NCBI GenBank assembly: GCA_965240325.2
Contig: OZ251246.1
Span: 992,001 to 1,056,000, forward strand
Source: Rebecca billardiae RCC1528
Taxonomy: Eukaryota > Protista > Haptophyta
DNA: 64,000 nt
Direction: 5' to 3'
In this document: piece after piece, positions 35,758 through 44,920 of the stretch
Layout of the letters: every line of letters begins with the position of its first letter
Position numbering within the stretch: position 1 is the first letter of the stretch
The notes under the pieces: model-generated
What the model saw: the letters and a program-made list of their open reading frames with translations, nothing else
Told to the model about the DNA's origin: nothing
Databases searched by the model: none
Made by a program: the position numbers and the translations under genes

Positions 35758-36729
35758 GACGAGGATGGCGCGTCGATGTTGCATGCTCGACGATTCATCT
35801 CTCTGCGGATGGCATCACGGGCTTGTCTGTGTCGCGCTGCGGCGAGGGTCGCCAACTCGCGAAGACGCGGTTGCTGCTACGGCGACAGACCCGGGAGGTC
35901 CGTCCGCTGCGCGTCGTACGCCGTTGGCGCTGCGCTTCCGTCGCATTGGTCACCGTCGACGCCATGCACGCCGGACGTGGGCTTCGGCTGAGGGACCGCG
36001 ACAGACAGTCCGGACTGTCCGGTGCGCGGATTCCGGCGATCGAGTTCGGAAGGCCGCGCCAAATCTTGCGTCGCGTGCGATGGCGCTTCCCGCCCGCGAG
36101 ACACCTCGTGATGAGGGCCTTTCCGCACCGAGCCCGACGCGCGGCGGTGGATCGCGCGAGGTGGCTGTCGTGCGCAGCGCTTGATGCTATGGCCGGTGCG
36201 AGCGCTCGACGTGCACGTCGGGCGAGGACCGCCCCAGGTCGCACGATCGTGTCGACGCGCCGAGCGTACCGCTCCAAACGCGTCGATTTAGCCCCCGTTC
36301 GACCTGCACGCGAGACGACGAGGGCAGCAATCGCGAATCGGGCGAAAACCCCCCTCGGGAGTCCTCGCGCGATGTCCGCGCCGGCGTTGGATTTGGCGCG
36401 CGCGGCCCACGCGCTCCGCGCCACCCGGTACTGTGTTTTCGGCCGAGCGTCCCCAGTGGGAGCTGCGAGGGCGCCCGGTAGTGAGCGAAGCGATTTTCTT
36501 TTCTTGGCGGACGATTTTCTTTTTTATTTTTCTTTTTCTTTTCTTTTTCCCGGGCACTACAAGGGGCGGACCTACGGCCCGCCATTCAAAAGACCGCCAT
36601 TGTGCTTCCTCTGACACTGGCTTGATGAATCATTTCGCCGCAGCACGGCAGGGCCATTTCTTTGGCAGGGCCGCGCAGCACGTGGACCGCCCGGCTTGGC
36701 CGCGCGCGCCGCGCACGGCGCTCGTCAGC

Positions 36730-38800
36730 ATGTCAGCTCGCCCGCTGCCGTTCCGGCTACGCGTGCCGCTGGCGAAGATCCTGCATGCGAAGCGCGGCGC
36801 GCCCGCGCAGGCGCCCAGCGTGTCTGGTTTCGGCGAGGAGATGTGGGACTACACCTCCAAGCCGGACTACCTCCGGCTCACGCTCACGTCGCGCGTGTAC
36901 GACGTGGCCAACGAGTCGCCCATGCTGCCGGCGAGCAAGCTGAGCGAGCGGCTGGGCAACGCGGTCTACTTCAAGCGCGAGGACCTGCAGCCGGGGTACT
37001 CGTTCAAAGTGCGCGGCGCGTACAACAAGCTCGCGCACATGAAGCCGGAAGACGTGCGCGGCGGCGTGCTCGCGCACGCGGTCGGCGCGCATGCAGAGGG
37101 CGTCGCGATCGCCGCGCACAAGCTCGGCGTGCCCGTGACGGTGGTGCTGCCCGAGAAGACGTCTGCGTGGAAGCAGCGCAACCTGGAGCGCCTCGGCGCG
37201 ACGCTCGTGCTCCACGGCCGCACGCACGAGGACGCCGTCGCCGAGTGCGCGCGCCTCTCACTCGAGAGCGGCCGGCCGGTGATCCCATCGTTCGACGACC
37301 CGCTCGTGATCGCCGGCCAGGGCACGGTGGGGCTGGAGGTGCTGCGCCAGCTGTCCGAGAGCCCGCCGCACGCCGTGTTCGTCTGCGTCGGCGGCGGCGG
37401 CCTGCTCGCCGGCGTCAGCGCGTGCATCAAGGCGGTCAACCCCGCCGTGAAGGTGATTGGCGTCGAGGCGACTGGCGCGGACGCGATGGGGCGCTCGCTG
37501 CGCCAAGGGTACAGGCTCACGCTCGAGCACGTGGAGCAGTTCGCCGAGGGCGCCGCCGTCGCGCGCGTGGGCGAGGAGACGTTCCGGTGCGCACGCGCCT
37601 CGCCGCGTCCCGCCGCCGCCGCCGCCGCCGCGTGCGCGCCGCCCGCGGTCGGCTGCGATTGACCGCGCCGCCGTGCGCCGCCGTGCGCCGCCGTGCGCTG
37701 CCGCGCGGCGTGCGGCGCAGCATCTGCGACGAGCTCGTGGACGACATGATCACGGTGACTCCGGACGAGATCTGCGCGTCGGTGCAGGACGGCTTCGAAG
37801 ACACGCGCGCGATGCTCGAGCCGGCGGGCGCGATCGCGATCGCGGGCCTCAAGAAGTGGGCCAAGCACGCGGGCGTGTCGGGCGAGACGCTGGTCGCCGT
37901 CACGTCCGGCGCCAACCTCACCTTCAACCGACTGCGGATGATCGCGGAGCGCGCGCTGATCGGGCAGCGCACGGAGGCGCTGCTCGCCGTGCGCATGCCC
38001 GACAGGCCCGGCGCGATGCTCAAGCTCTACGGCGCCATCGCCCCGCGCAACGTCACCGAGATGCTCTACCGCTCCTCCATGTCCGAGTCGAACAGCGAGG
38101 CGACCATCTTCCTCTCGATCGAGGTGAACGAGCAGGGCGCGGCCGCGGCGGGCGAGGTGGACCGGATGGACGAGGAGGTGGCGGAGATCGTGAAGGGGCT
38201 GGCGGTGGAGGGCATCCGCGCGGACGACATGTCGGAGAACGAGCTCGCCAAGAGCCACATGCGCTACCTCGCCGGCGGCACCAAGGTAAGGGCGCGAGCG
38301 CTGCTCGGCCGCGCGGCCGGGCGCAGCGCTCGCACTCAAAGTCGCTGCCAGGCTGCCAGGCGCTCACGCACGCGCCTTCCCGCGTGCCGCGCGCGCGCGC
38401 GCACGCGCGTTGCAGCCCAAGGGGGGCGAGATGCTCTATCGCTTCGAGTTCCCGGAGCAGCCGGGCGCGCTCAACAAGTTCCTCACCATGTGCGCGTGCG
38501 GCGTCGCGCGCAGCTGCGCAGGCGCCCCCCTCCGTGCTCACGCGCGCTCACCCACGGGAGCGCCGCACGCCGCCCCTCTCGCGCGCCGGCGCACGCAGGT
38601 TCAACGATCACGCGGGTGGAACGAGCTGGAACCTGACCTTGCTGCACTACAGGTACCGCGGTGCAGAGGTGTCGCGCGTGCTCACGGGCATCCAGGTGCC
38701 GCCCGCGGAGATGGCGCAGTTCCAGGAGTTCCTCGACAAGCTCGGCTACTACTACGTGGACGAGAGCAGCAACGTTGTGTATTCGACGTACTGCGACTGA
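36730..38800 (+). CDS. ilvA: Threonine dehydratase, biosynthetic type, with C-terminal regulatory domains, 4 exons
   Basis: VYDVANESP, FKREDLQPGYSFKVRGAYNK, FDDPLVIAGQGTVG, VGGGGL, LEPAGA, SGAN, PDRPG, ELAKSHMRYLAGG, YRFEFPEQPGAL, WNLTLLHYR. Introns 37587-37720, 38286-38415 and 38490-38598. Confidence 0.92.
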
Positions 38801-39379
38801 CTGAGGGCGGCGGCTCACTCAGCGGCGCGCGTCCGACGAGCGTGACGCCGGGCGCAGCCGGCTCGATGGCGGGCGGCGCACAGGCTCGACTAGCGCTTCC
38901 GTTCGCGTAGTGTGCTGGGCAGCCCGGCGCCCTAAGCCGCTGCTGGCCGCGGCTGGCGCGCCTGCTAACTTAAGCTACAGCGCTAGTGCTTGTTGCGGGG
39001 CGTCGCGGCCGTGCGGCGCAGTCGGGCCGTGCGGGCGCCAGCTCAGCAGCTGTACATGTATACTGTATACTCAGCTGTGCTCAAGTCAGCATCAGATTCC
39101 GAGCACCCGCTGCTGACGATTGCTGGTCCGGGACCGGATGTGATAGTCTAGCAGCATGACTCCATGTGATGACGACTGAATAAGCAGCAGGCATTGCGTC
39201 AGCGCAGTATCCCGGACCCGACCGAGCGAGTCATCGCGACGCCATTCGACGCGGAATCCGGGACGAATCGCGGTCCGCGCCAGCTGCCTGCTGATGCTCC
39301 AGCAGTCCAGCGCGGCGCCGCCGCGGACGGTGCGCAGCAGCAGCAGGGCCGATGAACGACCACGACCGCGCACCCGCGG

Positions 39380-41755
39380 TCAGCGGCCAGCCGCGCCCGA
39401 CGGCGGGCGCTCGCACATGTACGCGAGCAACGTCGACGACGTCGACTCGGGCGCGTTGCACTGCGTGGTCGACCATCCCTGCCCGCGCTCCTGCCCGACG
39501 ACCGCGCACTCGCCGCGCTCCAGCACCGGCTCGCCCTGCGCCCACTCGACGTAGTCTGCCCTCCCGCCCACCGGCGCTCCGCCCGCCCACGCCCAGCCCT
39601 CCCTGCCCTGGCGCGAGTAGCCGATCCACGTGCCCATCGACGCGTAGCGCTGCATGCAGTACACAAACCGGCCCTCGGCCTCGCTGCCGATGGCGACGAG
39701 CGCGCCGCCCTCCGCGCGGCACATCGCGAGCGCTCCGCCCCACGAGCTCTGGCCCGGGCGCGCGCCGATGCCGCCCAGGCCCGAGAAGAGGTACTCCGAC
39801 GTGCCGTTGGCGAACGCCGGCGCGAGCCACTCGCCCGCGCGCTCACCGCCGGAGGGCAGCTGCTCGCGCAGCAGCCGCTCGCACGCGCGGCAGTCCGCCT
39901 CGGCGGGCGCGGCGCCCCACGCGAGCAGGCCGGTCAGCACGAGCGCGTACGCGAGCACAAGCGCGAGCCTGCCCGCCGCACGGCTGGCGCGGCGAGCGCG
40001 CGACGCCCCGCATGGGAGGAGGCCCGGCATCGCGTGCAGCGCGGCGCGCTGCCGTCCCGCGGGCGGCGGCGGCGCTGCAGGCACCGCGTGACCCGCGTGC
40101 TGCGCGGCGCCATCGGCCGGCCCCCTCCAGTCGTCGCGTGCGGGCACGGCCTCGTCAGGCGGCGGCACCGCCTCGACCTCAGCCTGAAACCTCACGATGG
40201 TGTCGATGGAGTCGGGCGAGCGCAGGCCCGGGGTGATCTGCGCGGTGTTGTTCGCCGGCAGGCGCAGCGGCGGGATCGCGCTCGCGGGGACGACGGACAC
40301 GCTCGCCAGGCGGTGCGGCGGCAGCGCTTGCCCCCCGGGCGCGGCACCACCCTCGAGCCCAAAGCCGCGCCGTGTCGGCACGGAGCTGAGCAGCGAGCGC
40401 ATCGCGCCGTTGAACGCGTCGAGCCCGCCGTCGCACGCGGACTCGATGCAGGCGAGCAGGCGGAAGTAGTCGGCGCGGTTCATCGAGGCGCACGCGCGCA
40501 CGTCGTACGTCTCGATCGCGAGCTCGCGGTTGTACCCAGGCAGCTCAAACAGCGTGAGCCTCTCCTGGGCCACACCCAGCCCGATGTGTGTCCACACACA
40601 GACCTCGACTGTCTGCCACAGCCGGCCGACGAACGTCGGGCCGGCGAGGAGGACGAACTCGTTGCACCCGGCGATGTAGCACGGCAGGTTGCCCACGTCG
40701 AGCGCCGGGCTCGTCGTGTCGATGCAGCACGTGTCGATCCACACCGTCGGCTCCCGGCCGAACGAACTCACAAACTCGCGGCGCCACGCCTGCAGCGCCG
40801 CCCAGCGCGCGGCAGGGTCGTCGTGGTGCGAGTGCGAGATGAACGCGTCCACGTCCGCAAAGCGCGCGGGGAGCGTGGTCTCGTAGAGCTGGTGCGCGTC
40901 CGTCGCCCAGCGGAAGACGGCGGGCGTGAGCTTATCCAACCGCACGCCGCGAAACCGCTCCGCTGCGCTCTGTAGTACTGAGTCGATCCGTGAGCTGTGC
41001 AGCATGGCAGCGATCCCGGTCGCCGACGACATCAGCTCGCCGCTCGCGGCGAGCCAGCCGTGCACGCGCGCGCGCACGTCGGTGGTGAGCTCGAGCACGC
41101 CGATCGCGCAGGCGAGCGCGCAGAGGGCTACAATCCCCCCGAAGTGCACGGTGCCGAAGATTGGCGGCGAGCGCGTGACCAGCATCGCTGTGCTGCTCAG
41201 CAGCACCGCGCCGGTTGCGAGGTAGCAAAGCGCGAGCGTGCGGTGGAGGCGCAGCAGCAGCACGCTGGGCCAGATGCGGCCTCGGAGCGCCTGCACGAGC
41301 CCGTGCGCACTGTACGAGCCCGCGACGAGCCAAGCGACCGTGAGCGCCTGCCAGGTCAAGACGCCCGCGTACATGTAGTCGGTCGCGCTGCACGTGGGCA
41401 CGCCCCAGCCGATCAGCGAGTTTGCGACCGTGCGGTCCAGGGCATAGAGCGCGACGGCGAGGGAGATGGCGGAGATGGCGACGCCCGTGATCTTGATGGA
41501 GCGGCTATCCGACGGCAGCAGCGCCAGGAGCATGAGAGGCTGCCCGGTGGCAATCATCAGCGTGCTCGCCACCCACGACCTCCCCCCAATGGGCGACATC
41601 CCGAGGGTGACGCCGCCCGCGGCGAGCAAAAGAAGGCCACACACGAGCGGCGGCCCGGAGAGCACAAGCCGACGTTTCCGCGCGGCGAGGCGCGACGCCT
41701 CGAGCTGGTCGCGGATCGTCAGCCATTGCGGCTCGTGTGCCTCGCTCTGCGGCAT
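39380..41755 (-). CDS. Intronless multi-TM / TIR-HET-like domain / TM / C-type lectin-like domain protein
   Basis: About 6-7 N-terminal hydrophobic helices. DAFISHSHHDD..W..L..W...F...PTVWIDTCCID...LPCYIAGC..F.LLAGPTFVGRLWQTVE. TM LALVLAYALVLTGLLAWG. CTLD SWGGALAMC...GALVAI.SEAE..FV...WIG....W.W..G....YVEWAQGEP...EC.......W....C......YMCE. Confidence 0.8.
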   Translation of the reverse strand: MPQSEAHEPQWLTIRDQLEASRLAARKRRLVLSGPPLVCGLLLLAAGGVTLGMSPIGGRSWVASTLMIATGQPLMLLALLPSDSRSIKITGVAISAISLAVALYALDRTVANSLIGWGVPTCSATDYMYAGVLTWQALTVAWLVAGSYSAHGLVQALRGRIWPSVLLLRLHRTLALCYLATGAVLLSSTAMLVTRSPPIFGTVHFGGIVALCALACAIGVLELTTDVRARVHGWLAASGELMSSATGIAAMLHSSRIDSVLQSAAERFRGVRLDKLTPAVFRWATDAHQLYETTLPARFADVDAFISHSHHDDPAARWAALQAWRREFVSSFGREPTVWIDTCCIDTTSPALDVGNLPCYIAGCNEFVLLAGPTFVGRLWQTVEVCVWTHIGLGVAQERLTLFELPGYNRELAIETYDVRACASMNRADYFRLLACIESACDGGLDAFNGAMRSLLSSVPTRRGFGLEGGAAPGGQALPPHRLASVSVVPASAIPPLRLPANNTAQITPGLRSPDSIDTIVRFQAEVEAVPPPDEAVPARDDWRGPADGAAQHAGHAVPAAPPPPAGRQRAALHAMPGLLPCGASRARRASRAAGRLALVLAYALVLTGLLAWGAAPAEADCRACERLLREQLPSGGERAGEWLAPAFANGTSEYLFSGLGGIGARPGQSSWGGALAMCRAEGGALVAIGSEAEGRFVYCMQRYASMGTWIGYSRQGREGWAWAGGAPVGGRADYVEWAQGEPVLERGECAVVGQERGQGWSTTQCNAPESTSSTLLAYMCERPPSGAAGR

Positions 41756-41811
41756 GGACGGGCGCTCGCGGGAGAGCACGCGGGGGGCGCAAAATGCTGC
41801 GCAGTGTATTT

Positions 41812-43964
41812 CATAAGCCTATTTCTGCGAGCGTTACTCTCTCTAAGAGCCGCGCGTCCTGAACAGTCTGAATACGGAAACTCGTGAAGGCAAGTCGCCT
41901 TCGGCTGGGGACACCCGGTCCGCAGTGGCCGAGCCCGTGGCAGCCACGGACAGCTCGCACGGGCGCCGCGGCGTGAGGTCCTGCGGCCGTGGCGGTGCCT
42001 ATAGCAGGCGGCGCGGTGCTCGCGCGGCTGCAAAGGCGTGATGTACTCCACTCTGCGCTGCGCGCCTGCCCGCCCTCGTCACCTCCTTCGCGCCTGAGGC
42101 TGGCGCGCACACGTGCGCCGCGCCGCTCGTGCGAGCAGTGGCCGTGCCGCTTGTGGACGAGAGCTTGCACCCGCGCACGACGAGGTCGGTGCGGAGCGCG
42201 AGCAGACGAGGTCGGTGCGGAGCGCGAGCAGACATGCAGTGGGCCGTTTGCGTGCCCTACGCTCGCCGTGCAACATCACGCCTTGCGCGTGCGCACAGCC
42301 AGCGATCTCAGCGCAGGCCGTTGAGTGCATGCATACCGCAGGCGCGTGAGATCTGGTCGGCTCAGCGTGTAGGCTGCCGTTGTTGGAGACATCAGCATTG
42401 CGAGTGCGCTGGGACACTGCTAGTACGCGTGTTCGCACACTGACGTGAGCCCGCACACGCATCCAAACTGAGTGAAGACTGGGCCCCGTGCACACTACGG
42501 TACAGGCACGGCAGCGTGACGTCACATCACGTAACGTCATGTCATGACGTCATGACATGACGCTAGGAATGGCGTCACGTGACGGCCGGGCAGTGCTCTG
42601 CCCACGCCTGGCACACCCGGACCCACGTAGTCAGTGCACGCGGGGCTGACCGCGGCGGCGCGGCGCGGCGAGTGGCGGGACGCACCGGCGCCGCTGCCCG
42701 CCCCTGCTGATGCCGGGCCCGCTGCCCCGGGCTCATGAGAGAGCGGCTACTATCAGCGGGAGTCGATGCGGATGGCTACAACAGCACCACTGCGTCCCGT
42801 AGCAGCGGCACGCCAGCCCCCGCCGGACCAACACCGGTAGCACAGTCCGTGCACGTTACGTCTGTTACTTGGCGACCCGGCCTCCGTGCCGGGCGTGCGC
42901 GGCATGTCGTGACATAAAGGCTTCACCGACATGTAACCGACGAAACGGTCCCCACAAGAGTGTATGTCGGCATAACGCGTAAATAATTGCGCGTAAAACG
43001 CGTTACGTCATGACGTGACGACAGAAGAACTGCACGGGCATGACGCGTAGTGGGGCGCCCAGCTCGTTGGCTGTGCCGCTCAAGTTGCCAAGGGGTGAGG
43101 CAGTCTGGGACGAGGGCTGGCTGCACGTATTCAACACCTTTCCAAGGCATGGTGCGGCATGTACACCAGTAGCGTGGGGCGTCCATTGCAAACCAGTCGA
43201 CTTCTTCTTCTATAAGTACCAGGTCCAGGGCGGAGACCGCTCTCGCCGCCTGCAGAGACTCAGCAGGCGCGGCGCGGTGCGTAGCGGGCGTAGTCGCTGC
43301 TATACGTAGTAGAACTGAAGGTTTCCAAGCGGCCCGATCACGCGCATCAGCCGCCCGTGACCACGGTGTTCTACGTACATACATTTCCAACATTGCCACA
43401 CACATGCCCGCCAGAGTCACAGGCTTATCCTTGTCTCATCAGTCGCGGTTTCACCGACTCCGAGCCGACAACAGTTGAATGACTTTCTGTGGTCGGTCGC
43501 TGGCTGTGCGCACGCGCAAGGCGTGATGTTGCACGGCGAGCGTAGGGCACGCAAACGGCCCACTGCATGTCTGCTCGCGCTCCGCACCGACCTCGTCGTG
43601 CGCGGGTGCAAGCTCTCGTTCACAAGCGGCACGGCCACTGCTCGCACGAGCGGCGCGGCGCGCGTGTGCGCGCCAGCCTCAGGCGCGAAGGAGGTGACGA
43701 GGGCGGGCAGGCGCGCAGCGCAGAGTGGAGTACATCACGCCTTTGCAGCCGCGCGAGCACCGCGCCGCCTGCTATAGGCACCGCCACGGCCGCAGGACCT
43801 CACGCCGCGGCGCCCGTGCGAGCTGTCCATGGCTGCCACGGGCTCGGCCACTGCGGACCGGGTGTCCCCAGCCGAAGGCGACTTGCCTTCACGAGTTTCC
43901 GTATTCAGACTGTTCAGGACGCGCGGCTCTTAGAGAGAGTAACGCTCGCAGAAATAGGCTTATG
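41812..43964. mobile_element. Long near-perfect inverted repeat (arms about 470-490 bp) enclosing a 1.2-kb spacer; putative long-TIR element
   Basis: Arm 41812-42305 is the reverse complement of 43497-43964. By eye I found two substitutions plus a 26-bp tandem duplication in the left arm (42180-42231). Termini are CATAAG..CTTATG. No TSD seen. Confidence 0.85.
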
Positions 43965-44260
43965 CTGTACCAATACATCAGCGGTGCCTTCGTCAAGCTG
44001 GCGACGATTGTACATTCCCCTGCCGGGTAAACATTCGTCAAGAATAGATACTCGGTAGTGTAGTAGTACCACCGGGAAGGGTGAGACTGTACGACGACTA
44101 CGCCATTCGTCACGGAAGCTGATTATTGTCCGCCGAAAAAATGGCCGATCCACCGTGGTCCCCGGCCAGTAGTGGCCTCGGCCCGAGTCGGCCAATAAAA
44201 TGCGCACCCTATTCACCGACGATACATCACAAGCGCGGATCCGACCCAACCGCCGTCATC

Positions 44261-44920
44261 ATGGCGGACGCCCCCGCCGAGCAGCCGGAGCAAAAGTCGC
44301 TGCTGCCGCCCTTCTCGGTCCTCAACTACAAGTACACGCTCCTCGGCCTCGCGGCATGGACCGCAATCCTGGTCGTCGCCATCGTCGCCGTCGTCGTGAC
44401 GCCGCCGCCACCTTCTGCGGGCGCGGGCTTTGCCACGCTTGGGCCGATCGGCGTCCTGGATTCTTTCTTTGCGTCTGCCAGCGTGGGCATCACGGTCTGG
44501 TACTTCTTCTTGCAGTCGCCCCACCTCTTCATGCAGCTCGGCTTCAAGAAGTTCGTGCCCCTCATGATGACGATCATGGTGCTCTACATGGACGTGCAGT
44601 TCAACCTCGGCATGCTTGTGCTCGTGCTCTCGATCGCGCGCGTGGGGGGCGCGCTGGAGACCATCCTCGCGGCCGTCGCGGCGGGCGCCGCGCTCTTCAA
44701 CCGCTTCGTCCTCACTCCGCGCGCGCTCATCGCGGGCCGTGCGTCGCGCCCGAAGCGGAACGCCGCGGAGGACAGCCGCGAGGCAGCAGACGCAGCCAAG
44801 TTTGCCAGCCTTGGCGCCGACGCCGCTGGGGACTCCGACACGGCGCTCTGGCACCGTCTGGTTGTCATCTTCGTCCTCATGCACACGGGGGCGATGTTGA
44901 CGCACGTCGTGCTGCTTTGA
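44261..44920 (+). CDS. Small multi-pass membrane protein (possibly TMEM205/DUF4149-like)
   Basis: Five hydrophobic segments, GITVWYFFLQSPHLF..LGFKKFVP, LFNRFVLTP, ALWHRL. Strong coding codon bias. Confidence 0.7.
   Translation: MADAPAEQPEQKSLLPPFSVLNYKYTLLGLAAWTAILVVAIVAVVVTPPPPSAGAGFATLGPIGVLDSFFASASVGITVWYFFLQSPHLFMQLGFKKFVPLMMTIMVLYMDVQFNLGMLVLVLSIARVGGALETILAAVAAGAALFNRFVLTPRALIAGRASRPKRNAAEDSREAADAAKFASLGADAAGDSDTALWHRLVVIFVLMHTGAMLTHVVLL

What the first reader, a model, noticed from the sequence alone, without database searches (positions are those of the whole stretch)
39380..41755. Candidate algal pattern-recognition receptor: multi-TM + cytosolic TIR/HET-like domain + TM + extracellular C-type lectin in one ORF
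Seen: one uninterrupted 791-codon frame with 6-7 hydrophobic helices and then a domain carrying DAFISHS, VWID..CID and GRLWQTVE (about 40400-40860). After that come a Pro-rich linker, an Arg-rich stretch, one more TM helix (about 39915-39985) and a complete C-type lectin-like domain (about 39400-39800). Known: TIR domains start with D(V/A)FISY/H and carry the NADase glutamate in the WCxxE helix, and fungal HET domains share WID.LCI and R.W..QE motifs. CTLDs are extracellular glycan or protein sensors. Inference: the positive-inside rule puts the TIR-like domain in the cytosol, tethered at both ends, with the lectin outside. That would couple glycan sensing directly to a possible NAD+-consuming signalling enzyme, in reverse order to Toll-like receptors. 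The putative catalytic Glu is retained, but the nearby Cys is Gln and the lectin has EPV instead of EPN/QPD. I do not know of this architecture being described.
Basis: partly seen in the sequence, partly recalled or inferred. Interest (0 to 1): 0.8.

Follow-up and report, generated by a model that had tools for sequence, protein, structure and literature searches.

The report
Algal membrane TIR/HET protein with lectin
This is a real, intact gene of a GC-rich haptophyte-type alga whose protein joins six membrane helices, an internal TIR/HET-type (immune and cell-death type) domain, a seventh helix and an outward-facing C-type lectin domain; it looks like a surface sensor from a large, unstudied algal family, but no ligand, enzyme activity or transcript has been shown.

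Summary
One open frame (ATG 41755 to stop 39380, minus strand, 791 aa) encodes four parts:
- six predicted membrane helices;
- a domain that folds as a TIR domain (model pLDDT 92; Z 10.7 to the RUN1 TIR domain; all 50 listed matches are TIR domains);
- a disordered linker and a seventh helix;
- a C-type lectin domain (Pfam E 2e-9; fold Z 11.6).

The fusion is not a chance read-through. Six other public proteins carry the same order of parts, with a conserved 'ADCxxC' motif after helix 7. All seven TIR domains form one clade (support 96). In Pavlovales sp. CCMP2436 a spliced mRNA contig carries TIR, helix 7 and lectin together.

The TIR-like domain belongs to a family of about 1,900 representative proteins, mostly haptophyte, that sits between Pfam TIR_2 and HET. 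The glutamate at the TIR catalytic position is invariant, and this gene keeps it. This gene differs at 11 of 45 highly conserved positions (W to H, Q to T, C to Q among them). Its lectin lacks the canonical sugar and calcium residues (EPV and WST).

Charge distribution puts the TIR domain inside and the lectin outside. Function is inferred only.

Multi-helix TIR genes were noted in Gephyrocapsa in 2025; I found no paper on the lectin fusion. Earlier notes of this scan report two more such genes on other pieces of this genome.

The parts
39380..41755 (-). Whole coding frame, 791 codons plus stop, from the first ATG. The frame is open from 41779/41818.
   Evidence: GC at third codon positions is 0.8-1.0 across the frame and drops to 0.57-0.72 upstream and 0.6 downstream.
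41090..41659 (-). Six predicted membrane helices (residues 33-53, 59-79, 88-108, 126-148, 170-192 and 202-222, numbered from the ATG), preceded by a basic N-terminal segment (RKRR).
   Evidence: Hydropathy. Full-length AF2 model with block-mean pLDDT mostly 79-95, dipping to about 62 in the TM3-TM4 loop. This region is homologous to the N-terminal regions of about 44 family members, with E down to 2e-14.
40955..41083 (-). Conserved helices next to the membrane, between helix 6 and the TIR domain (family consensus VHAWLA..G...SAAAGIA.L).
   Evidence: Alignments A1 and A3; helices 225-267 in the model.
40370..40870 (-). TIR/HET-like domain (residues 296-462 from the ATG; 304-470 in the 799-codon numbering).
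   Evidence: 1,901 representative proteins match at E<=0.001. Of 101 aligned members, 71 hit Pfam TIR_2 and 60 hit HET at E<=1. AF2 model pLDDT 92.1. Foldseek and VIA-align top hits are TIR domains, Z 10.7 to RUN1.
40604..40606 (-). GAG codon for the glutamate (E384 from the ATG; E392 in the 799 numbering) at the position of the TIR catalytic glutamate, within RLWQTVE.
   Evidence: Invariant in 101 family members. HMMER aligns the family's 'RLWCivEl' to SNC1 'TWCLNEL' and TLR15 'CWCQYEL'.
40001..40369 (-). Pro/Ala/Arg-rich linker, predicted disordered. It contains a possible in-frame 96-nt intron (GTGAGG at 40195 to CAG at 40100) that I could not test.
   Evidence: pLDDT under 50 for residues 469-516 and 527-582. 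The linker varies in length among homologues. Splice-site scan.
39908..39976 (-). Seventh membrane helix (residues 594-616), preceded by a basic stretch (SRARRASRAAGR).
   Evidence: Hydropathy 2.12; helix 583-632 in the model. A single helix at the same place occurs in P0004, P0018, P0035, P0045, P0059 and P0084.
39881..39898 (-). Motif A-D-C-x-x-C just outside helix 7; both Cys are invariant in all seven lectin-bearing members.
   Evidence: Alignment A1, invariant C630 and C633 in the 799 numbering.
39401..39808 (-). C-type lectin-like domain. It has an N-G-T sequon at its start, WIGY, and four core Cys. EPV replaces EPN and WST replaces WND.
   Evidence: Pfam Lectin_C E 2e-9 and 1.8e-10 on the piece alone. 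PDB sequence hits to PLA2R, DEC-205 and DC-SIGN. Fold Z 11.6 to LLT1 and 11.1 to langerin.

Best explanation
This is a genuine single gene for a seven-pass membrane protein of a haptophyte (Pavlovales-type) alga. The N-terminus is cytosolic. Six helices form a conserved bundle, and a TIR/HET-type domain follows in the cytosol. A disordered linker leads to a seventh helix that crosses the membrane once more, so a disulfide-rich C-type lectin-like domain faces outside (or into a lumen).

The most likely mode of action is a surface sensor. Binding of a ligand to the lectin-like domain would cluster or re-orient the protein, bringing the cytosolic TIR/HET domains together. A multivalent ligand on a virus, bacterium, grazer or another algal cell is one possibility. 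The TIR/HET domains would then signal either by cleaving NAD+ into a nucleotide signal through the conserved glutamate or by recruiting partners.

Shown: the gene, its parts, their folds, and conservation of the architecture in relatives. Inferred: topology (strongly), ligand-driven clustering, NAD+ chemistry and a role in defence.

The outer half (basic tail, one helix, C-terminal lectin outside) has the same orientation as animal type II C-type lectin receptors. In those receptors the cytoplasmic tail carries a short signalling motif; here a whole 6TM-TIR module takes its place.
For: The frame is one gene:
- The frame is uninterrupted, with coding-type third-position GC throughout.
- Six other proteins carry 6TM, TIR-like domain, linker, one helix, ADCxxC and Lectin_C in the same order.
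- All seven TIR domains fall in one clade of ten rows, SH-aLRT 96.
- In Pavlovales sp. CCMP2436 the contig L003 lacks two GT..AG introns of the genomic locus L002. It carries TIR, helix and lectin in one reading frame.

The middle domain is a TIR fold: pLDDT 92.1; Z 10.7, rmsd 3.4 over 134 residues to RUN1. All 50 listed matches are TIR domains, including SARM1, MyD88, SPARTA and AbTir.

The family shows TIR and HET signatures: 71 of 101 members hit TIR_2 and 60 of 101 hit HET.

The glutamate is invariant and aligns with the 'WC..E' glutamate of SNC1 and TLR15.

Topology: about 20 Lys/Arg lie on the predicted inner loops and tails against 1-2 on the short outer loops. An Arg-rich stretch precedes helix 7, and an N-G-T sequon and conserved Cys follow it. 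The model has six helices before the TIR domain.

The lectin domain is confirmed by sequence and fold.

Literature: haptophyte HET-like domains are related to TIR (PMC4986451). In G. huxleyi, TIR genes with multiple N-terminal membrane helices respond early to virus infection (PMC12489294).
Against: - No transcript of this locus could be examined; no RNA run was listed.
- The query's TIR-like domain does not reach any Pfam TIR or HET threshold itself. It departs from the family consensus at 11 of 45 highly conserved positions, among them W318H, Q355T and C389Q, each at least 98% conserved elsewhere. It also sits on a long branch (1.18). It may therefore be catalytically altered or inactive.
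- The lectin domain lacks the Asn of EPN and the Asn-Asp of WND, so Ca2+-dependent sugar binding of the classical kind is unlikely.
- Most family members (median 35 residues after the domain) have no ectodomain. The 6TM-TIR core must therefore work without a lectin, and its own input is unknown.
- Topology rests on hydropathy, charge and a model, not on a dedicated predictor or an experiment.
Confidence: 0.6

Rival explanations
1. The architecture is real, but the TIR/HET domain is a non-enzymatic scaffold, as classically described for Toll-like receptors and proposed for fungal HET. It would recruit other TIR/HET proteins of this genome, which are very numerous, and not cleave NAD+.
For: The family is as close to HET as to TIR_2, and the enzymatic activity of HET is not established (PMC10197012). 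This copy has lost three residues that are nearly invariant in the family. The family is very large in haptophytes (1,901 representatives), which leaves many possible partners.
Against: The glutamate, the Arg and Trp of 'R.W...E' and the Asp of 'W.D' are invariant in 101 diverse members. Such conservation is more typical of an active site than of an interface. A 2026 preprint reports that many TIR domains formerly considered adaptors make cADPR isomers (10.64898/2026.04.20.719644).
Confidence: 0.25
2. This copy is a degenerate paralogue, a decoy or regulator. It keeps the fold and the lectin but has lost catalysis or signalling, and it modulates the intact paralogues by mixed oligomers.
For: It has 11 of 45 departures at highly conserved positions, and the C389Q change is unique among the seven lectin-bearing members. 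It has the longest linker of the subfamily and a long terminal branch. Earlier scan notes report two more genes of this architecture elsewhere in the genome (unchecked by me).
Against: The frame is intact over 791 codons with strong codon bias. All nine invariant family residues are kept. AF2 models the domain with high confidence.
Confidence: 0.1
3. These are two adjacent genes that happen to share a frame: a 6TM-TIR gene ending near residue 470, and a secreted lectin starting at Met584, whose following stretch looks like a signal peptide.
For: Most family members end about 35 residues after the domain. Met584 is followed by a basic stretch, a hydrophobic core and A-P-A-E-A. In DNA this GC-rich, a 125-codon stop-free spacer in the same frame has a chance of roughly 0.1 (my estimate from base composition). 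The stretch of codons 531-600 has the weakest coding periodicity.
Against: There is no stop codon for the upstream gene. The query's TIR domain lies inside the clade whose members all carry the helix, ADCxxC and lectin. A spliced mRNA of a relative carries the parts together. Third-position GC stays at 0.8 or above through the spacer.
Confidence: 0.03

Closest known systems
Haptophyte 'several N-terminal membrane helices + TIR' genes noted in Gephyrocapsa huxleyi (New Phytol 2025, PMC12489294)
   Same: Several N-terminal membrane helices are followed by a cytosolic TIR-type domain with the conserved glutamate, in a haptophyte. I did not compare sequences, but the family found here is mostly haptophyte and has this core.
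   Different: That paper reports no further domains in those genes. Here a second membrane crossing and a C-type lectin domain follow the TIR domain. Expression during infection is known there and unknown here.
Fungal HET domain (Pfam PF06985) and its non-fungal homologues
   Same: The three sequence blocks correspond: DAFxSHSW; VWxDxxCIDQ, which is like HET's W-I-D..C-I-.-Q; and RLWC..E, which is like HET's R.W..QE. 60 of 101 family members hit the HET model. Dyrka et al. 2014 already listed haptophyte HET-like sequences and linked HET to TIR.
   Different: The query itself gives no HET hit. The best HET E-value in the family is only 3.3e-4. Fungal HET proteins are soluble or NLR-linked, not membrane proteins with lectins.
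Toll-like receptors and IL-1 receptor family
   Same: A membrane receptor with an outward binding domain and a cytosolic TIR-fold domain.
   Different: The order is reversed, with the TIR domain before the ectodomain. There are seven membrane helices instead of one, a lectin instead of LRR or Ig domains, and the TIR domain is tethered at both ends.
Animal type II C-type lectin receptors (DC-SIGN, Dectin-1, langerin, NK receptors)
   Same: Basic cytosolic stretch, one helix, then a C-terminal CTLD outside. The CTLD sequence and fold match these proteins.
   Different: The cytosolic part is a 6TM-TIR module rather than a short tail with an ITAM-type motif. The EPN and WND residues are absent, as in the non-sugar-binding NK-type CTLDs.
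Enzymatic TIR domains (plant RUN1/RPS4/RPP1, SARM1, bacterial AbTir, SPARTA, ThsB)
   Same: These are the best structural matches, Z 8.9-10.7. The glutamate sits at the same place in helix alpha-C.
   Different: Sequence identity is 9-16% only. The family has an extra C-terminal helical part (about 180 residues against 135-165). No activity has been shown.

Membership tests
TIR domain superfamily (Pfam clan STIR: TIR, TIR_2, HET and others) | Flavodoxin-like alpha/beta fold with a parallel sheet, matching solved TIR domains | tested here: met
   AF2 pLDDT 92.1. VIA-align Z 10.7, rmsd 3.4, 134 residues aligned to RUN1 TIR; all 50 listed matches are TIR domains and 86 chains reach Z>=8. In Foldseek, 48 of the top 50 are TIR domains; the best E is only 9.5e-4 with TM 0.45-0.52.
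TIR domain superfamily (Pfam clan STIR: TIR, TIR_2, HET and others) | Score above the curated threshold of a Pfam TIR-type model | tested here: not met
   The query has no TIR, TIR_2 or HET hit even at E<=10. Among 101 relatives, 71 hit TIR_2 (best 8.6e-7), 60 hit HET (best 3.3e-4) and 12 hit TIR at E<=1. A family profile against PDB sequences gives only weak TIR hits (E 0.15-0.35).
Enzymatic (NADase) TIR domains | Glutamate in helix alpha-C ('WC..E') at the catalytic position | tested here: met
   E392 (799 numbering) is invariant in 101 members. It aligns to the Glu of SNC1 'WCLNEL' and TLR15 'WCQYEL'. That this Glu is catalytic in plant TIRs and SARM1 is established knowledge, not tested here.
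Enzymatic (NADase) TIR domains | NAD+ cleavage or cyclisation activity | not testable with these tools
   This needs recombinant protein and LC-MS.
Fungal HET domain (PF06985) | Three conserved blocks, including W-I-D..C-I-.-Q and R.W..QE | tested here: inconclusive
   The family consensus VWxDKCCIDQ and RLWCIxE resembles blocks 2 and 3, and 60 of 101 members give weak HET hits. The query has CIDT and RLWQTVE and gives no HET hit.
C-type lectin-like domain (PF00059) | Pfam score above threshold and the CTLD fold | tested here: met
   38.6 bits against a cut-off of 22.6, E 2e-9. Z 11.6 to LLT1, 11.1 to langerin and 10.9 to ASGPR.
C-type lectin-like domain (PF00059) | Core cysteines and the WIGL-type motif | tested here: met
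   C687, C758, C774 and C789, plus WIGY. All these Cys are invariant in the seven-member alignment.
Ca2+-dependent carbohydrate-recognition domains (the classical C-type lectins) | EPN or QPD motif together with WND | tested here: not met
   The query has EPV and WST where Endo180 CTLD2 has EPN and WND in the HMMER alignment. Two relatives have EPN (P0004) or QPD (P0084), but none of the seven has WND.
Toll-like receptors | LRR ectodomain, one membrane helix, C-terminal TIR domain | tested here: not met
   No LRR was found. The TIR domain precedes the ectodomain, and there are seven helices.

The most novel reading that the evidence does not exclude
A class of eukaryotic surface receptor not described in the papers searched. 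An extracellular lectin-like domain would control a cytosolic TIR/HET enzyme that is clamped to the membrane at both ends by its own six-helix bundle. In this algal lineage, recognition at the cell surface would then be converted directly into an NAD+-derived signal or into cell death. The gene would be one member of a modular toolkit in which the same TIR/HET effector is wired to lectins, haem NO sensors and other inputs.
Probability: 0.3. Interest if true: 0.8.

Novelty: new variant of a known kind. Interest (0 to 1): 0.55.

Why it matters
Almost nothing is known about how marine microalgae sense viruses, bacteria, grazers or each other. TIR domains are the shared currency of immune signalling in bacteria, plants and animals, and fungal HET domains execute non-self cell death.

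This work shows that one algal lineage (Pavlovales-type haptophytes) has a conserved, transcribed gene type that wires an outward-facing lectin-like domain to a membrane-clamped TIR/HET domain. That gives concrete receptor candidates with a testable output: NAD+ consumption or cADPR-type products.

The subfamily is small and defined: one clade with a conserved ADCxxC motif. Some members carry EPN or QPD. It therefore offers a natural series for ligand and activity tests. This copy also carries natural substitutions at near-invariant family positions, which could show which residues matter.

Tried and rejected
- RNA evidence: the look-up of sequencing runs listed no run for 39200-42000.
- Direct Pfam scans of the middle domain and of the membrane part gave nothing, even at E 10.
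- The word-based protein search with the whole protein returned a single hit, Diacronema lutheri KFE25_001982 at 43% over the domain. It was probably swamped by low-complexity words.
- The membrane bundle has no informative structural or Atlas match: Z 8.9 to a pentameric channel and to a designed six-helix barrel, which is within the noise for helical proteins.
- The window holds no second copy of the domain.
- One search was sent one base out of frame and found nothing; one search repeats it in frame.
- The careful tree search did not finish in 300 s, so the tree quoted is the quick IQ-TREE one with SH-aLRT support only.
- The two-gene reading was considered and rejected on the evidence given under rival explanations.
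- I ran no further search on the lectin half, because the recurrence of the architecture was already shown.
Full report
**What is there**

The minus strand carries one open frame from 41779 (GTG) or 41755 (first ATG) to the stop at 39380-39382, which is 799 or 791 codons. The DNA is about 70% G+C, and frames of 250 codons or more are common in all six frames: 83 in 64 kb. Length alone therefore proves little.

GC at third codon positions is 0.82-1.0 along the whole frame. It falls to 0.57-0.72 just upstream and to 0.6 downstream. In the Pro/Ala/Arg-rich spacer it stays at 0.8 or above, but between codons 531 and 600 first-position GC is as high, so the periodicity is weakest there.

The gene next door (36433-38800, plus strand) is a threonine dehydratase whose Pfam matches are spread over three reading frames. 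It therefore has introns, and the genome is eukaryotic.

**The parts**

- **Lectin domain.** Pfam finds Lectin_C at residues 677-777 (E 2e-9, 38.6 bits against a cut-off of 22.6). The piece alone matches PLA2R, DEC-205, Endo180 and DC-SIGN in the PDB.
- **Middle domain.** It gives no Pfam hit by itself. An exhaustive HMMER search of 1.84 billion representative proteins finds 1,901 relatives at E<=0.001 and 1,112 at E<=1e-10. In an alignment of 101 of them (A2), F, S, W, D, P, G, R, W and E are invariant, with the consensus DAFxSHSWHDD ... VWxDKCCIDQ ... GPTYLxRLWCIxEL.
- **Family signature.** Scanned one by one, 71 of the 101 hit TIR_2 (best 8.6e-7), 60 hit HET (best 3.3e-4) and 12 hit TIR. 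The family profile against PDB sequences gives only weak hits, and four of the top five are TIR domains. The family's 'RLWCivEl' is laid on SNC1 'TWCLNEL' and TLR15 'CWCQYEL'.
- **Fold of the middle domain.** An AlphaFold2 model made with A2 has mean pLDDT 92.1. In Foldseek against the PDB, 48 of the top 50 matches are TIR domains, with modest scores (E from 9.5e-4, TM 0.45-0.52). VIA-align gives Z 10.7 (rmsd 3.4, 134 residues) to the RUN1 TIR domain, 10.5 to SARM1 and 10.3 to AbTir. All 50 listed rows are TIR domains.
- **Atlas matches.** A search of the ESM Atlas by shape finds unnamed haptophyte clusters. One has Lectin_C in 22% of its members and one has the haem NO-binding domain in 99%.

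The middle domain is therefore a TIR-fold domain of a large, mostly haptophyte family that lies between Pfam's TIR_2 and HET models. This agrees with Dyrka et al. 2014, who linked HET to TIR and listed a haptophyte HET-like sequence (PMC4986451).

**One gene or two?**

This was the main risk. Most family members end about 35 residues after the domain. Met584 is followed by a stretch that could pass for a signal peptide. I estimate that a stop-free 125-codon spacer in the same frame has a chance of about 0.1 in DNA of this composition.

Four results argue against two genes:

1. Six other proteins have Lectin_C at the C-terminus: P0004, P0018, P0035, P0045, P0084, and P0059 with its cluster mate P0153 (KAJ1627824.1 of Pavlovales sp. 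CCMP2436). Each has exactly one hydrophobic helix between the TIR-like domain and the lectin.
2. In the seven-way alignment the whole order of parts lines up. Two cysteines just after helix 7 (A-D-C-x-x-C) and the lectin's core cysteines are invariant.
3. In a tree of 139 TIR-like domains, the seven lectin-bearing proteins fall in one clade of ten rows (SH-aLRT 96), so the fusion is an inherited trait of a subfamily to which this gene belongs. This is a quick tree without bootstrap.
4. The JGI contig L003 that encodes P0059 matches the genomic locus L002 of CCMP2436 in blocks separated by gaps. The 3' blocks are 99.5-100% identical. Two of the gaps are GT..AG introns of 143 and 91 nt. L003 is therefore a spliced mRNA, and it carries most of the TIR domain, helix 7 and the lectin in one frame. 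Its 5' 1.1 kb is only 81-86% identical to that locus, so the contig may be a chimera of alleles or paralogues at that end.

No RNA run was listed for this window, so the transcript of this locus itself remains unseen. A possible in-frame 96-nt intron in the spacer (40195-40100) cannot be excluded. It would remove 32 disordered residues and change nothing else.

**Topology**

The full-length model (69-sequence alignment A3; mean pLDDT 76, pTM 0.72) has six long helices before the TIR domain, a disordered spacer (residues 469-582), one long helix (583-632) and the lectin domain. Structure search confirms the lectin domain at Z 11.6.

The charge distribution points one way:

- six Lys/Arg in the N-terminal segment, with RKRR next to helix 1;
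- none to one on the loops 1-2, 3-4 and 5-6;
- two to five on the loops 2-3 and 4-5;
- RAR after helix 6;
- five Arg in the 25 residues before helix 7;
- after helix 7, a net-acidic stretch with conserved cysteines and an N-G-T sequon.

It is an inference from sequence and a model, not a measurement.

**How this copy differs from its family**

Of 45 positions that are at least 85% conserved in the other 100 aligned domains, this copy differs at 11. These include W318H (W in 99%), Q355T (Q in 98%), C389Q (C in 99%) and C432S (C in 97%). It keeps D311, F313, S317, W347, D349, P366, G380, R386, W388 and E392 (799-codon numbering). C389Q is unique among the seven lectin-bearing members. The frame is intact and codon bias is strong, so this is not a decaying gene, but altered or lost activity is possible.

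In the lectin, EPV stands for EPN and WST for WND. Three of the five classical Ca2+/sugar ligands are missing, as in non-sugar-binding CTLDs. Relatives P0004 (EPN) and P0084 (QPD) keep the first motif, but none of the seven has WND.

**Mechanism**

I think the most likely reading is a surface sensor. Ligand binding to the outer domain would cluster the protein and bring the cytosolic TIR/HET domains together. That is how TIR domains are activated in the systems studied so far (established knowledge). The output would be an NAD+-derived signal through the invariant glutamate, or the recruitment of partners.

Most family members have no ectodomain, and other subfamilies carry other sensor domains. 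This suggests a modular system in which the 6TM-TIR core is the effector and the lectin is one of several inputs. The role of the six-helix bundle is unknown, since no informative structural match was found.

**Comparison with what is known**

[quoted passage not shown] It states that no further domains were found (PMC12489294).
- A 2026 preprint finds cADPR-type products for many eukaryotic TIR domains. It places haptophyte TIRs in a clade with a Chlamydomonas enzyme that makes 3'cADPR.
- My searches found no paper describing a TIR or HET domain joined to a C-type lectin in algae. The library is incomplete, so this is not proof of absence.
- Proteins of this architecture exist unnamed in public databases.

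I therefore class it as a new variant of a known kind.

**Earlier notes of this scan**

These are AI notes that I did not check. They report two more genes of the same 6TM-TIR-TM-lectin architecture on other pieces of this genome, and many other TIR/HET fusions with H-NOX, a nucleoside hydrolase or a PA-7TM module. My own Atlas result for the H-NOX cluster is consistent with these notes.

Noticed in passing
window 41812-42305 and 43497-43964: Near-perfect inverted repeat: arms of 396 nt at 99% and 101 nt at 100% complementarity, about 495 nt in all and about 1.2 kb apart. It begins only 57 nt upstream of this gene's ATG, so the gene's likely promoter or 5' UTR lies in one arm. The other arm faces a DUF4149 membrane-protein frame at 44126-44920.
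   Followed up: partly
window 36433-38800 (+): Threonine dehydratase gene (PALP plus two Thr_dehydrat_C matches) spread over three reading frames, so it has introns. It is convergent with the gene studied here; the 3' ends lie about 580 nt apart.
   Followed up: partly
L003:2464-3249 (-) and L003:99-1096: The CCMP2436 mRNA-like contig carries a second called gene on the opposite strand at its 3' end. Its first 1.1 kb is only 81-86% identical to the genomic locus, while the rest is 99.5-100% identical. The contig may merge overlapping convergent transcripts, and alleles or paralogues.
   Followed up: no
P0002 (1110 aa, ENA): One family member holds two complete membrane-plus-TIR/HET modules in tandem (domains at about 290-460 and 800-964), which is an internal duplication of the whole core.
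   Followed up: no
P0006, P0050, P0014 in the lectin clade: Three rows inside the lectin-bearing clade show no Lectin_C. P0006 and P0050 have helices after the domain but short or unassigned tails, and P0014 is short. They may be truncated models or may have lost the lectin.
   Followed up: no
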